A DNA stretch of 63,301 nt, filler included, from Octopus bimaculoides (taxonomy: Eukaryota): the NCBI RefSeq assembly GCF_001194135.2. It is 6 parts of 6 records of this genome, joined end to end, with 100 filler letters (N's around TTAATTAATTAA, not from the genome) between each part and the next. Parts side by side here need not be neighbours in the genome. Positions count along the whole stretch, not along the records: positions 23,858 to 40,943 come from NC_069010.1; 5 more parts are not named here. The stretch is one strand, 5' to 3'. The position numbers and the translations under genes were made by a program. Below, piece by piece: positions 24,733 to 40,435 of the stretch. The notes beneath the pieces are model-generated. The model was not told the DNA's origin and ran no database searches. It saw nothing but the letters and a program-made list of their open reading frames with translations. Positions within the stretch are counted from its first letter, which is position 1. Each line of letters begins with the position of its first letter.

Positions 24733-24890
24733 TTGTACATTGTGAATAATTCAGTATAGGTATTCTTTTGCCAAAATTTGTTTGACAATGGCTATAGACT
24801 CTCACAGTTCTGTTATAGTTATTTTTCATATAATTCACCAAGGCTGGCAGGTGACATCCACACGCCATATTGTAATTGTCACGGAGGTCA
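24733..24890 (-). CDS. Internal coding exon: last LRR strand + LRR C-terminal cap (LRRCT) of an extracellular LRR protein
   Basis: Acceptor TTCCCTTTATAATTACAG, donor GTAAGT, phase 2/1, 158 nt open: (x)DLRDNYNMACGCHLPALVNYMKNNYNRTVRVYSHCQTNFGKRIPILNYSQCT. Four-Cys CxC..C..C pattern and two N-x-S/T sequons. Confidence 0.8.
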
Positions 24891-25115
24891 CTGTAATTAT
24901 AAAGGGAACTCTAACTGAATGTGCTTCTGGTCAAAAGAGAAACTGCTGTCTGAATTACCAAGAAACAAGGTTTATAATATTTGAGCAAGCTTATTAAAAT
25001 TATGACATTCAGGTTTATTTTTTCCAAAGAGATGCTGATAGCATCAATAATGCGGAATGGTTTTTAATGGAAAGTGGAATCATATAAAGTTCCTATTCTC
25101 GTTTANNNNNNNNNN

Positions 25116-25422
25116 CTCTCACAGTTCTGTTATAGTTATTTTTCATATAATTCACCAAGGCTGGCAGGTGACATCCACACGCCATATTGTAATTGTCACG
25201 GAGGTCACTGTAATTATAAAGGGAACTCTAATTGAATGTGCTTCTGGTCAAAAGAGAAACTGCTGTCTGATTTACCAAGAAACAAGGTTTATAATATTTG
25301 AGCAAGCTTATTAAAATTATGACATTCAGGTTTATTTTTTCCAAAGAGATGCTGATAGCATCAATAATGTGAAATGGTTTTTAATGGAAAGTGGAATCAT
25401 ATAAAGTTCCTATTCTCGTTTA
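25116..25422. repeat. Near-identical second copy of 24799-25105 across a 10-N gap
   Basis: 307 bp, 4 substitutions; probably an uncollapsed allele or contig overlap. Confidence 0.9.
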
Positions 25423-25869
25423 GCTAACANNNNNNNNNNNNNNNNNNNNNNNNNNNNNNNNNNNNNNNNNNNNNNNNNNNNNNNNNNNNNNNNNNNNNNN
25501 NNNNNNNNNNNNNNNNNNNNNNNNNNNNNNNNNNNNNNNNNNNNNNNNNNNNNNNNNNNNNNNNNNNNNNNNNNNNNNNNNNNNNNNNNNNNNNNNNNNN
25601 NNNNNNNNNNNNNNNNNNNNNNNNNNNNNNNNNNNNNNNNNNNNNNNNNNNNNNNNNNNNNNNNNNNNNNNNNNNNNNNNNNNNNNNNNNNNNNNNNNNN
25701 NNNNNNNNNNNNNNNNNNNNNNNNNNNNNNNNNNNNNNNNNNNNNNNNNNNNNNNNNNNNNNNNNNNNNNNNNNNNNNNNNNNNNNNNNNNNNNNNNNNN
25801 NNNNNNNNNNNNNNNNNNNNNNNNNNNNNNNNNNNNNNNNNNNNNNNNNNNNNNNNNNNNNNNNNATAT

Positions 25870-26662
25870 ATACAGTGAGTTTCTTTGCCCTAGGTGTCAG
25901 AAATACACTCGGCAAGAAATGGAAACAAAATTGAAAGAAAGAAATTACCCAGCTGGATGACAAAGGGAAAGATATTGTTACGTGCCGAGGATCCTGAAAA
26001 GGGAAATGTTGCATCCAACTTTAGATCAATAACAGGCCTCCTGCAAATGTGGAAATTAATATTAGGTGCTTTGGCCGGTAAACTGTATAGATATCTGGGA
26101 AAAAGTGGGCTGCTGCCTACTGAACAGAAAGGGTGCCGAAAGAGGAGTCGTGGAACGAAGGGTCAGCTCTTAATTGATAATTTAATTATCAGGGACTGCA
26201 AGAGAAGACACACGACCAGAATATGTTATGGGTTGTCTATCTTAAATCATGCGATATGAATCCACACTCCTGGATAATAAGAACAATGGAAATGTATGGA
26301 ATAGGGGAAATATGTGAAGTCTTATATGGAATGGCATGAAGGACTAGTGAACGAAATTGACAGCATAGAATCAAGCATTAGGAGAGGTGAAAATCAAGAG
26401 AAAAATCTTCCTGGGAGACAATGTGTCCCTATTGATCTTCGTGATAGGAATGATCCCTTTGAGTGAAATACTACAGAAAACAAAGTTGGGGTTTGATCTG
26501 GGAAGAGGTAAGGGAAAACTGAACCAATTGCTGTTCATGGACGAACTGAAGCTATTCACAAAAACTGAGGCAGAACTGGACAGCCTAGTCCAGTCTGTGC
26601 GGATTTTATCCAATGAAATTAAGATGGAGTTTGAATTTTAAAAATATGCTACGATGGTGATG
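25870..26662 (+). mobile_element. R4/Dong-type RT fragment (subfamily 1), disrupted
   Basis: NFRSITGL..WKL..EQKGCRKRSRGTKGQLLID and IFLGDNVSLLIF..LNQLLFMDELKLF; stops and frameshifts; left end in an N gap. Confidence 0.85.
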
Positions 26663-38061: not shown

Positions 38062-38771
38062 TGAAGAAGAAGACGGAGAAGAAGAAGAAGAAGAAGAAGA
38101 AGAAGACGAAGTTGAAGAAGACAGCGAAGGTGAAGAAGAAGAAGAAGAAGACGAAGAAGAAGAAGAAGAAGAAGAAGAAGATGAAGGTGAAGAAGAAGGT
38201 GAAGAAGAAGAAGAAGAAGAAAAAGAAGACGGAGATGAAGAAGAAAAGAAAAGGAAGAAGAAATTTTAGAAGAGAAAATAGAAGAAGATGAGGAAGAGCA
38301 AAGAAAAGAAGAAGAACAAAAAGAAGAACAGCAACTATAAAAGAAGAAACATAAGAAGAAGAAGAAAGATAGCAAAAACAACTAGAATTACAAAAAAAGA
38401 TGATGATGGAGAAGAAGACGAAAAGAATACAAAAGGAAGAAGAAGAAGAGGAACAAGAAGAAGAAAAAGGAAAAGTGGAAGGAGAAGAAGAAAAGAAGAG
38501 GGAGAAGAAGGAAATGAACAAGAATAAGGACAGGAGTAGGTGATGTAGAAGAAGAGGACAGACAACAAGAAGAAAAAAACGAACAAGAAGAAAGAGAAGA
38601 ACAAGGAGAAGAATAAAAGAGGAAGAACAAGAAGTAGGAAAACAAAGAAGACGAAAATGAAAGGGAATAGAAGTATAAGTAGATGATCACGTAGAATAAG
38701 AAAAAGAAGAGAAAGGAGAAAAAGAAGAAGACGAAGAAGAAGAAAAAGAAGACGAAAGTCAAGAAGGAGAA

Positions 38772-38803
<32 letters not shown>

Positions 38804-40060
38804 AAAAGAAGACGAAGTTGAAGAGGAAGAAAAGAAGAAGAAGAAGAAGAAGACGAAGAAGACGAAGATGACGAAGAAGTAGAAGAAGAAGAAGAAGAAG
38901 ACGAAGTTGAAGAAGAAGAAGAAAAAGAAGAAGAAGAAGTAGACGAAGAAGTAGAAGAAGAAGAAGAAGAAGAAGAAGACGAAGTTGAAGAGGAAGAAGA
39001 AGAAGAAGAAGAAGTAGACGAAGAAGAAGAAGAAGAAGAAGAAGAAGAAGAAGGAGATGAAGATGAATAATAATAAAACAAAGAAGAAGAAGAAGAAGAA
39101 GAAGAAGATGAAGATGAATAATAATAAAACAAAGAAAAAGAAGAAGAAGAAGAAGAAGAAGAAGCAGAAGAAGAAGAAGAAGACGAAGGTGAAGAAGAAG
39201 AAGAAAAACAGGAAGAAGAAGAAGAAGAAGACGAAGTTGAAGAAGAAGAAAAAGAAGAGGAAGAAGACGACGAAGGTGAAAAAGAAGAAGACGAAGTTGA
39301 AGAAGAAGAAGAAGAAGACGAAGGTGAAGAAGAGAAGAAGTAGAAGAAGAAGAAGAAGAAGAAGACGAAGTTGAAGAAGAAGAAGAAGAAGAAGAAGAAG
39401 AAGAAGAAGAAGAACAGGAAGAAGATAAAGACGAGGAAGAAGAAAAAGAATAAGAAGAAGCAGAAGAAGAAGACGAAGGTGAAGAAGAAGAAGAAAAAGA
39501 AGAAGACGAAGTTGAAGAAGAAGAAGAAGAAGAGGAAGAATAAGAAAAAGGTGAAGAAGAAAAAGAAGAAGAAGAAGCGAAAGAAGACGAAGATGACGAA
39601 GAAGTAGAAGGAGACGAAGAAGTAGAAGAAGAAGACGAAGTTAAAGAAGAAGAAGGAGAAGAAAAAGAAAAAGAAGAAGTAGACGAAGAAGAAGAAGAAG
39701 AAGAAGAAGAAGAAGAAGGTGAAGGAGAAGAAGTGGAATAATAATAATAAGACGACGAAGAAGAAGAAGAAGAAGACGAGAAGAAGAAGACGAGAAGAAG
39801 AAGACGAGAAGAAGAAGACGAGAAGAAGAAGAAGAAGAAGAAGAAGAAGAAGAAGACGAAGGTGGAGAAGAAGAAGAAGAAGAAGAAGAAGAAGAAGAAG
39901 AAGAAGACGAAGAAGAGCAGAAGAAGAAGGAGACGAAGAAAAGAAGGAGAAAAGAACAATAAGGAAATGAAGAAAATATAGAAGGAAATGAAGTAGACAA
40001 TAAGATAGACAATAAGGAGAAGAAGAAGAAGAAAAACAACAACAACAAAATGTGAAACAA
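37150..40060 (+). repeat. ~2.9-kb degenerate (GAA)n polypurine tract with higher-order variants
   Basis: Recurrent GACGAAGGTGAAGAA and GACGAAGTTGAAGAA units, local duplications (e.g. 39055-39140), short GAT islands. Confidence 0.95.
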
Positions 40061-40363
40061 GAATACGAGAATGGAACTGAATTGGGAGGAAAGCAGTATA
40101 AAGAGGAGGAGACGGACGGGTAAAAGATGGAAGTAAGGAGAAGGGGGAGTGTGACGTAGGCGGCGGCGGAGGAGTCTCAGGACGACGACAACGAATATGT
40201 GAAGAAGAAAATAACCAAAAAAAAAACCAATGAATACCAGAAAAAGAAGAATGGATTATGTGTTTAAGGAGTGAGAATGAGACAAATCGGTAAATGAATT
40301 AATATTAAACATTCAGAATTATATCGTGAGTGAAAGAGTCTGAAGAAAACAGAGGCAACTTAC

Positions 40364-40435
40364 AACGTTTGTAAATTGTAGAGATTTGCAAACCATCCAT
40401 CTTTGATGTCCTTAATTTGATTGTTGGAAAGATAT
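40364..40435 (-). CDS. Internal coding exon encoding one 24-aa leucine-rich repeat
   Basis: Acceptor CCTTTTATAATGTAG, donor GTAAGT, exactly 72 nt, phase 2/2: (x)YLSNNQIKDIKDGWFANLYNLQT(L/F), matching xLxxNxIxxIxxxxFxxLxxLxxL. Confidence 0.88.

What the first reader, a model, noticed from the sequence alone, without database searches (positions are those of the whole stretch)
24733..40435. Hidden LRR cell-surface/secreted protein gene missed by the ORF track
Seen: two minus-strand exons with GT-AG sites and compatible phases (2/2 then 2/1). Joined over a 15,473-nt intron they read YLSNNQIKDIKDGWFANLYNLQT-F-DLRDNYNMACGCHLPALVNYMKNNYNRTVRVYSHCQTNFGKRIPILNYSQCT: one full LRR, then LxxNxxxxCxCxL with two further Cys. 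Known: 72-nt phase-2 exons and phase-1 module ends are typical of extracellular LRR proteins, and LRR-GPCRs (GRL101/LGR-like) are reported expanded in molluscs. Inference: a divergent LRR receptor whose cap lacks the usual NPW..W. Family (LGR, TLR-like, adhesion) cannot be fixed from two exons.
Basis: partly seen in the sequence, partly recalled or inferred. Interest (0 to 1): 0.75.

Follow-up and report, generated by a model that had tools for sequence, protein, structure and literature searches.

The report
Unannotated octopus LRR adhesion-GPCR gene exons
The two small minus-strand exons are real, spliced together in RNA, and encode the last leucine-rich repeat and the cysteine cap of an unannotated copy of an octopus-specific family of LRR-bearing adhesion G-protein-coupled receptors that is already described, so this is a sound but ordinary gene-finding result.

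Summary
Both exons exist as described: 40435..40364 (72 nt) and 24890..24733 (158 nt), minus strand, with AG/GTAAGT sites. One RNA contig (run X7) crosses the 40364|24890 junction exactly. More than 12 RNA runs end exactly at both borders of the second exon. Both assembly gaps lie inside the intron, so no reading frame crosses them. The 10-N gap is a false join: 300 nt, including part of the cap exon, are written twice.

A full HMMER scan with the 52-aa cap peptide found 21 relatives (53-69% identity), all from Octopus. The full-length ones are LRR - LRRCT - three-finger-like Cys module - GPS - 7tm_2 adhesion GPCRs. Two of them are listed in the published octopus-specific "group 3" class-B expansion (Ritschard 2019). 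An annotated O. bimaculoides paralogue has the same exon plan: 72-nt phase-2 LRR exons, then a cap exon that ends in phase 1.

The GPS and 7TM parts of this copy lie outside the piece and were not seen. The gene is weakly expressed. A more abundant, near-identical RNA form with a different upstream LRR exon is probably a paralogue.

Verdict: a new member of a known kind, of modest interest.

The parts
40364..40435 (-). Exon A: 72-nt phase-2/phase-2 LRR exon encoding (x)YLSNNQIKDIKDGWFANLYNLQT(F)
   Evidence: Sequence and splice sites. The donor at 40364 joined to 24890 is seen in the X7 RNA contig. 24-aa alignments to LRR units of family proteins at 50-61% identity. Same 72-nt 'cag|ATATCT...|GTAAGT' exon form as in paralogue L001. 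The acceptor at 40435 is not confirmed by RNA.
24733..24890 (-). Exon B: 158-nt LRRCT cap exon (enters in phase 2, leaves in phase 1) encoding DLRDNYNMACGCHLPALVNYMKNNYNRTVRVYSHCQTNFGKRIPILNYSQCT
   Evidence: Both borders are used in more than 12 RNA runs. 53-69% identity to 21 Octopus proteins. Cys pattern CxC-x22-C-x15-C, aligned to the Slit2 LRRCT. dN/dS about 0.24 against the L001 paralogue over 35 codons.
24891..40363 (-). Intron between exons A and B (15,473 nt as assembled; the true length is uncertain)
   Evidence: GT..AG ends. No further family exon in the readable part. Contains two gaps, an artefactual duplicate, LINE fragments and a long (GAA)n tract.
25116..25415 (.). Artefactual second copy of 24799-25098 (an unmerged contig overlap at the 10-N gap). 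It includes a false partial copy of exon B at 25116-25207.
   Evidence: 99% direct repeat. DNA contigs of X1 and X5 read straight through 25105 into the letters of 25423-25429, with no branch and no doubling of depth.
25430..25865 (.). Unread gap (436 N) in the intron, 540 nt upstream of exon B in the transcript sense. It could hide a 'FLFLPSI'-type last-LRR exon.
   Evidence: DNA contigs extend about 340-360 nt into it, but only 30 letters are shown. The upstream exon of the abundant RNA form is nowhere in the readable piece.

Best explanation
The two exons are part of a transcribed, unannotated member of the octopus-lineage family of LRR-bearing adhesion (class B2) GPCRs.

Exon A encodes one 24-residue 'typical' LRR. 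Exon B encodes the C-terminal cap (LRRCT), whose four cysteines (CxC...C...C) should form the two disulfides that close the LRR solenoid. The transcript continues into an exon that begins NYSLFQRNLQ, which in all relatives opens a 10-cysteine three-finger-like module.

By analogy with the complete relatives, the protein would present an N-terminal LRR ligand-binding arc on the cell surface. That arc would be linked through the Cys-rich module, a weak HRM-like region and a GAIN/GPS autoproteolysis domain to a secretin-type 7TM that signals.

Shown: the exons, their junction, the LRR and LRRCT identity, the family relationship and the shared exon plan.
Inferred: that this particular copy still carries the GPS/7TM part, and that it is functional.
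For: - Junction and borders in RNA.
- LRR_8 at 31 bits, cut-off 27.
- The cap peptide finds 21 proteins at E<1e-3 among 1.84 billion representatives, all Octopus, at 53-69% identity.
- P0002, P0008, P0009, P0012 and P0019 carry GPS and/or 7tm_2 together with LRR_8; P0019 also has a Death domain.
- The UniProt entries of the P0012 and P0019 clusters are labelled class B, group 3 in the supplement of Ritschard et al. 2019 (PMC6408891).
- The 10 residues after exon B in RNA (NYSLFQRNLQ) are identical to the family consensus.
- The annotated O. bimaculoides paralogue (L001) has three 72-nt LRR exons and a cap exon with the same phases and the same 'ttacag|T GAC' start.
- The profile of the cap aligns to the Slit2 D4 LRRCT, E = 1.6e-8 for the chain.
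- The AF2 model of relative P0004 has a confident LRR arc and a helix after CxC. It matches Nogo receptor, NGL-3 and VLR ectodomains.
- dN/dS is about 0.24 against L001.
Against: - Only two exons lie in the piece. No GPS, GAIN or 7TM of this copy was seen.
- Expression of the exact window form is very low: contig depth 2-3 in one run, X7. The raw RNA runs read (about 6% of each) gave almost nothing on exon A.
- The family's usual 'EDGAFLFLPSI' last LRR is absent between exon A and the cap. However, relatives P0004 and P0014 also join an ordinary LRR directly to the cap.
- The window has S where over 90% of relatives have G (VYSHC). The full-length P0012 also has S there.
- Several relatives are short models without 7TM, so a non-GPCR product is possible.
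Confidence: 0.8

Rival explanations
1. The locus encodes a short secreted or lipid-anchored LRR - LRRCT - three-finger protein without a 7TM part. It would be either a stand-alone gene or a short isoform, acting as a soluble or tethered binding protein rather than a receptor.
For: Several relatives are modelled that way. P0004 and its isoforms stop shortly after the Cys-rich module with a distinct tail. P0015 (151 aa) is named 'ly6/PLAUR domain-containing protein 1-like', and P0003 and P0010 are also short.
Against: Many of these models sit on short scaffolds (37-77 kb) or are marked partial, so truncation by the assembly is likely. All long models continue into GPS/7tm_2. Nothing in the window tests this.
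Confidence: 0.15
2. The two exons are a transcribed remnant of a partial gene duplicate (a pseudogene or fragment) in a fast-duplicating cluster. It is spliced at low level but makes no functional protein.
For: Very low RNA depth for the exact window form, while near-identical forms are 10-50 times deeper. The family-typical last LRR exon is missing from the readable intron. There is multi-copy, polymorphic DNA around exon B. The intron is loaded with LINE fragments and a 2.9-kb (GAA)n tract.
Against: The frame is open across both exons and on into the next exon. The splice sites are canonical. All family-invariant cap residues are kept (C, G, C, H, L, P, A ... C ... Y, Q, C). dN/dS is about 0.24 against a paralogue.
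Confidence: 0.12
3. The gene is an LGR/GRL101-type class-A LRR GPCR or a Toll-like receptor. The reader listed both as possible.
For: The generic LRR + cap architecture is shared with these families. LGR4/5 and TLR ectodomains appear among the PDB matches.
Against: None of the 21 specific relatives has 7tm_1, LDLa or TIR. Those with a membrane part have GPS + 7tm_2. The PDB matches are to the generic LRR fold only.
Confidence: 0.02

Closest known systems
Octopus-specific class-B 'group 3' adhesion GPCR expansion (Ritschard et al. 2019, PMC6408891). In NCBI: 'adhesion G-protein coupled receptor G6(-like)' / 'GPR126-like' of O. bimaculoides, O. vulgaris and O. sinensis, e.g. XP_052827273.1.
   Same: The cap exon peptide is 53-69% identical and the next 10 residues are identical. 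The exon plan is the same (72-nt phase-2 LRR exons, cap exon ending in phase 1). LRR units are alike at 50-61%.
   Different: This copy's sequence is in no annotated proteome searched; the closest is 69%, from O. sinensis. It joins an ordinary LRR directly to the cap instead of the usual 'EDGAFLFLPSI' last LRR. Its cap is 4 codons shorter than in XP_052827273.1. Its GPS/7TM part was not seen.
Vertebrate ADGRA2/ADGRA3 (GPR124/GPR125): LRR - LRRCT - Ig - HRM - GAIN - 7TM adhesion GPCRs
   Same: An N-terminal capped LRR domain on an adhesion GPCR with an HRM-like region and GAIN/GPS. A precomputed Pfam list gives GAIN_ADGRA3 for P0012.
   Different: The octopus family has a three-finger-like 10-Cys module after the cap instead of an Ig domain. 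My own Pfam scan did not reproduce the ADGRA3 hit and gave only a weak GPR128 GAIN hit, so the subfamily is open. NCBI's 'G6' label is not supported by the domain order either: the scans show none of the CUB, pentraxin or other N-terminal domains that I recall for ADGRG6 (own knowledge).
Slit / Nogo receptor / NGL / LINGO-type extracellular LRRNT-LRR-LRRCT ectodomains
   Same: 24-residue 'typical' LRRs with a four-cysteine LRRCT. There is a sequence-profile match to Slit2 D4 including the cap, and fold matches to Nogo receptor, NGL-3, LINGO-1 and VLR.
   Different: The cap lacks the NP(F/W)xCxC and W-rich motif (N-x-x-M-A-C-G-C-H-L-P-A-L-V-N-Y instead) and falls below Pfam's LRRCT model. The downstream architecture is that of a GPCR.

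Membership tests
Leucine-rich repeat (Pfam LRR_8 / 'typical' 24-residue LRR) | LxxLxLxxNxL core in a 24-residue unit, scoring above the Pfam gathering score | tested here: met
   LRR_8 scores 31.0 bits against a cut-off of 27, E = 2.1e-7, on residues 1-29 of the joined peptide. 24-aa alignments to family LRR units.
LRRCT (C-terminal LRR cap) | Four cysteines, CxC-x(~20)-C-x(~15-20)-C, directly after the last LRR and alignable to caps of solved LRR proteins | tested here: met
   CGC-x22-C-x15-C. The family profile aligns Cys for Cys with the Slit2 D4 LRRCT in 2v70 (chain E = 1.6e-8; the stretch including the cap has i-E = 0.0018). The AF2 model of P0004 has the helix after CxC at pLDDT 62-80.
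LRRCT (C-terminal LRR cap) | Match to Pfam LRRCT (PF01463), or the NP(F/W)xCxC...W motif | tested here: not met
No LRRCT hit at E<=10. The motif reads NYNMACGCHLPALVNY.
Adhesion GPCR (class B2) | GAIN domain with a GPS autoproteolysis motif | not testable with these tools
   It lies outside the 17-kb piece. It is present in relatives P0008, P0009, P0012 and P0019 (GPS 42-52 bits).
Adhesion GPCR (class B2) | Secretin-type seven-transmembrane domain (7tm_2) | not testable with these tools
   It lies outside the piece. It is present in relatives P0002, P0012 and P0019 (84-125 bits).
Octopus 'group 3' adhesion-GPCR expansion (Ritschard 2019) | Specific sequence relationship to listed group-3 members, restricted to octopus | tested here: met
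   Cap hits P0012 (cluster with A0A0L8GYR2) and P0019 (cluster with A0A0L8FLR8) are both 'B 3' in the paper's tables. All 21 hits are Octopus. No phylogeny was made.
Octopus 'group 3' adhesion-GPCR expansion (Ritschard 2019) | Shared gene structure | tested here: met
   In L001 the LRR exons are 72 nt each and the cap exon has the same phases and the same first codons.
LGR / GRL101 class-A LRR GPCR | Rhodopsin-type 7tm_1 (and LDLa in GRL101) | tested here: not met
   No 7tm_1 or LDLa in any of the 20 relatives scanned. Tested on relatives, not on this copy.
Toll-like receptor | Cytoplasmic TIR domain after a single TM | tested here: not met
   No TIR in any relative.

The most novel reading that the evidence does not exclude
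The 72-nt, frame-neutral LRR exons of this octopus adhesion-GPCR family may be used as cassettes. Different numbers and choices of LRR units would be spliced between LRRNT and the cap, and this, together with many near-identical, copy-number-variable paralogues, would give a diversified set of ectodomains.

The window's exon A - cap junction would then be one such choice, and the abundant 'FLFLPSITNI - cap' RNA another.

Support: two O. sinensis genes have RefSeq isoform sets differing by whole 24-aa units with different cassettes chosen. LRR numbers from 0 to about 13 are seen among relatives. Exon B is multi-copy and polymorphic in DNA.

Not excluded, but not shown: the RefSeq isoforms are computed models, and the two RNA forms seen here differ in sequence and more likely come from two loci.
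Probability: 0.25. Interest if true: 0.6.

Novelty: new member of a known kind. Interest (0 to 1): 0.3.

Why it matters
The result adds one unannotated, weakly expressed copy to a lineage-specific receptor expansion. Ritschard et al. 2019 reported that expansion as co-localised, positively selected and expressed in the axial nerve cord, suckers and skin.

In practical terms, it shows that short-exon LRR ectodomains of this family are under-annotated. Many database models start at the Met inside the cap exon or are named slit, chaoptin or LRRC15. Copy counts and LRR-domain frequencies for the family ('LRR in 5 of 22') are therefore probably underestimates. It also flags an assembly error that falsely duplicates part of a coding exon.

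The finding does not change what is known about how such receptors work.

Tried and rejected
- The word-indexed protein search found nothing, neither with the 76-aa peptide nor with the 86-aa peptide extended from RNA. Relatives found later share many 5-mers with these queries, so this is a limit of the tool, not evidence of absence.
The contiguous 52-aa exon-B peptide was used instead.
- The abundant RNA form's upstream (30 nt) and downstream (30 nt) exons were searched in the window at up to 3 mismatches. Neither is there.
- tblastn of 25 family proteins against the piece found no third exon.
- Rfam found nothing in the piece.
- I looked for the window inside two O. bimaculoides loci fetched for relatives (L001, L002). 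Only paralogous cap exons at 72-75% identity were found, so neither is this locus. The look-up of P0017 found nothing.
- Raw RNA runs X34-36 gave one read each on exon A, so the acceptor is not confirmed.
- RNA editing was considered for the abundant variant, because three of its four listed differences are A>G in the transcript sense. It could be neither confirmed nor excluded. The fourth change is C>A, the upstream exon differs, and further close forms exist in raw reads, so a paralogue is favoured.
- AF2 did not model the Cys-rich module (pLDDT < 50), so its three-finger fold rests on weak profile hits only.
- The dN/dS comparison with L002 was misaligned by one codon and is discarded.
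Full report
**What is in the sequence**

On the minus strand, 40435..40364 is a 72-nt stretch preceded by a pyrimidine-rich tract plus AG and followed by GTAAGT. 24890..24733 is a 158-nt stretch preceded by ...taattacAG and followed by GTAAGT. Only one frame of the joined 230 nt is open. Pfam LRR_8 scores 31.0 bits on residues 1-29 (cut-off 27, E = 2e-7). Pfam's LRRCT model gives no hit.

**The gaps, tested first**

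Both gaps lie in the intron between the two exons, so no reading frame crosses them.

- The 10-N gap (25106-25115) is flanked by a 300-nt direct repeat: 24799-25098 = 25116-25415 at 99%.
- DNA contigs of two runs (X1, 818 nt; X5, 628 nt) run without a branch from 24629 through 25105 into GCTAACATTATT.... These are the letters that follow the second copy at 25423-25429. Depth is not doubled.
- The repeat is therefore an unmerged overlap of two contig ends. The partial second copy of the cap exon at 25116-25207 is an assembly artefact.
- The 436-N gap (25430-25865) is really unread. DNA contigs reach about 340-360 nt into it, but only 30 letters are shown to me.
- The quoted intron length of 15,473 nt is thus about 317 nt too long at the first gap and uncertain at the second.

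**RNA evidence**

- Run X7 holds a 139-nt contig that covers 40409..40364 and continues at 24890..24798 without a mismatch.
- A second X7 contig covers 24827..24733 and runs on into ATTACTCGTTATTTCAA.
- In more than 12 other runs (X11-13, X16-20, X27, X14/15), contigs match exactly 24733-24890 and leave the genome at both ends. Both borders of exon B are therefore used splice sites.
- The libraries are unstranded or are contigs. The transcribed strand is inferred from GT..AG.
- The acceptor of exon A at 40435 is not covered. The last read-laying run gave one read per raw run there.

**A second RNA form**

The contigs of those other runs differ from the window at 24778, 24782, 24793 (T>C) and 24797 (G>T). 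Upstream they are joined not to exon A but to ...TTTCTTATTCCTCCCCAGCATAACTAATAT, which encodes FLFLPSITNI. Neither this exon nor the shared downstream exon (NYSLFQRNLQ...) is in the piece.

- In the transcript sense three of the changes are A>G (S>G, N>D, and one silent). They restore the family consensus.
- No DNA contig with exactly this form was seen in seven DNA runs, but such contigs drop variants.
- Raw reads of X35 and X36 show further close forms, for example upstream FLFLPNIIQI.
- The 46-nt core 24825-24870 has 5-18 times single-copy depth in DNA.
- X5, X9 and X10 carry a second version of 24713-24871 at about half depth.

I read this as a cluster of very similar, partly copy-number-variable paralogues, with the abundant form coming from another copy. 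An allele with its extra exon in the gap, or A-to-I editing, is not excluded.

**What it is**

The word-indexed protein search found nothing. A full HMMER scan of 1.84 billion representatives with the 52-aa exon-B peptide gave 21 hits at E<1e-3, at 53-69% identity. All 21 are from Octopus sinensis, O. vulgaris or O. bimaculoides.

- The long ones have LRR_8 repeats, the cap, a 10-cysteine module ending CCxxxxCN, a weak HRM, GPS and 7tm_2. One also has a Death domain.
- None has 7tm_1, LDLa or TIR.
- NCBI calls the long ones 'adhesion G-protein coupled receptor G6(-like)' or 'GPR126-like'. It calls the fragments slit-, chaoptin-, LRRC15- or Ly6/PLAUR-like.
- The UniProt entries in the clusters of P0012 (A0A0L8GYR2) and P0019 (A0A0L8FLR8, the one with the Death domain) are both listed as class B, group 3 in the supplementary tables of Ritschard et al. 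2019.
- That paper describes group 3 as an octopus-specific adhesion-GPCR expansion of about 21 sequences, with LRRs found in 5 of 22. In O. bimaculoides the octopus-specific groups 3 and 4 are expressed mainly in the axial nerve cord, suckers and skin.

The ten residues that follow exon B in RNA are identical to the family consensus.

**Gene structure**

The genomic locus of P0012 (L001, O. bimaculoides CM046610.1) has three LRR exons of 72 nt each, 5-7 kb apart. Each has the form cag|A TAT CT...|GTAAGT. They are followed by a cap exon that starts ttacag|T GAC and ends in phase 1. This is the same plan as in the window. Its cap exon is 73% identical in nucleotides to exon B, with dN/dS about 0.24 over 35 ungapped codons. 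Neither L001 nor L002 is the window's own locus.

**The cap**

- The cysteine pattern is CGC-x22-C-x15-C.
- A profile of the family (last LRR to Cys module) aligns with the fourth LRR domain of Slit2 (2v70). The alignment runs through its LRRCT with the first three cysteines in register; the aligned stretch ends before the fourth. The chain E-value is 1.6e-8.
- An AlphaFold model of relative P0004 has pLDDT above 90 in the LRR arc and 62-80 in the cap. It places a helix right after CxC.
- That model matches Nogo receptor, NGL-3, LINGO-1 and VLR ectodomains.

**How it most likely works**

By analogy with the complete relatives, the product is a surface receptor. A capped LRR arc binds a partner, and that arc is tethered through a three-finger-like module, an HRM-like region and a GAIN/GPS domain to a secretin-type 7TM.

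- For this copy only the LRR and cap exons and the first codons of the next exon are shown. The remainder is inference (confidence about 0.8 for family membership, lower for a complete and functional receptor).
- Its expression is low: depth 2-3 in one run.
- It lacks the family's usual 'EDGAFLFLPSI' last LRR between exon A and the cap, but P0004 and P0014 also join an ordinary LRR to the cap.
- Its Ser at a mostly Gly position is shared with the full-length P0012.

**Rivals**

- A short secreted LRR - cap - three-finger protein. Some relatives are modelled so, but mostly on short scaffolds.
- A transcribed fragment of a partial duplicate.
- LGR or TLR, rejected on the relatives' domains.

**Comparison and novelty**

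The family is known and annotated; this copy is not. It is a new member of a known kind.

Which vertebrate subfamily is closest remains open. The LRR - LRRCT - ... - HRM - GAIN - 7TM order recalls ADGRA2/3, and a precomputed list gives GAIN_ADGRA3 for P0012. My own scan, however, gave only a weak GPR128 GAIN hit.

Two side observations may deserve follow-up:

- RefSeq isoform sets of two O. sinensis genes differ by whole 24-aa LRR units, with different cassettes chosen.
- A three-finger (Ly6/uPAR/activin-receptor-like) module follows the cap in all relatives. The support is Activin_recp at 21.0 bits against a cut-off of 20.9, plus weak Toxin_TOLIP and LYPD6 hits.

The species is probably O. 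bimaculoides. I infer this from DNA and RNA runs dated 2015 and from paralogues at 72-75% identity in that genome. It was not verified.

Noticed in passing
window 24799-25098 and 25116-25415: A 300-nt direct repeat (99%) on either side of the 10-N gap is an unmerged contig overlap. It writes the first 92 nt of the cap exon twice (the false copy is at 25116-25207).
   Followed up: yes
window 24778, 24782, 24793, 24797 (exon B): The abundant RNA form differs here. Three changes are A>G in the transcript sense (S>G, N>D, one silent) and restore family-consensus residues; one is C>A. This form has a different upstream LRR exon (FLFLPSITNI) that is not in the piece. Paralogue, other haplotype and A-to-I editing were not separated.
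   Followed up: partly
window 24713-24871: DNA runs X5, X9 and X10 carry a second version (about 8 differences in 80 nt) at roughly half depth. X1, X4 and X6 carry only the window form. This is either a very divergent haplotype or a copy-number-variable recent duplicate.
   Followed up: partly
window 24825-24870: This 46-nt core of the cap exon (encoding CGCHLPALVNYM...) has 5-18 times single-copy depth in DNA runs and is highly covered in RNA by diverged paralogues. It gives a rough count of family copies.
   Followed up: partly
window 25894-29436 and 33358-35492, + strand: Broken ORFs with reverse-transcriptase (RVT_1, weak) and endonuclease (Exo_endo_phos_2, 33 bits) matches. These are non-LTR retrotransposon fragments inside the intron, antisense to the gene. 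A similar tail ORF sits at the left edge (23810-24043, minus strand).
   Followed up: partly
window 37167-40033: A (GAA)n-type microsatellite of about 2.9 kb (72% matches) in the intron, just downstream of exon A in the transcript sense. Shorter (AAT)n, (GT)n, (AT)n and CA-rich arrays lie at 29723, 36158, 36558 and 32958.
   Followed up: no
window 24375-24520: Short pieces (about 20-30 nt) are matched by many unrelated, deep RNA contigs on both strands. This is a dispersed or simple repeat, not an exon of this gene.
   Followed up: no
relatives P0004/P0028-P0039 and P0005/P0040-P0044 (O. sinensis): RefSeq isoform sets differ by whole 24-aa LRR units (337/361/385/409 aa and 477/501/525 aa), with different LRR cassettes chosen after LRRNT. 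This suggests cassette splicing of the 72-nt LRR exons in this receptor family.
   Followed up: partly
relatives, directly after the cap (e.g. P0002 residues 117-200); the first codons are seen in RNA downstream of window 24733: A 10-cysteine module ending CCxxxxCN follows the cap in all relatives. Its profile hits are weak and all to the three-finger clan (Activin_recp at cut-off, Toxin_TOLIP, LYPD6). NCBI names one fragment Ly6/PLAUR-like. The AF2 model of it is poor.
   Followed up: partly
L001 (O. bimaculoides CM046610.1:31042056-31117808) and L002 (CM046628.1:6553258-6579811): Paralogous cap exons keep 72-75% nucleotide identity to the window, extending about 50-100 nt into the flanking introns. 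P0013 and similar database models begin at the Met inside the cap exon, so their upstream LRR exons were missed by annotation.
   Followed up: partly
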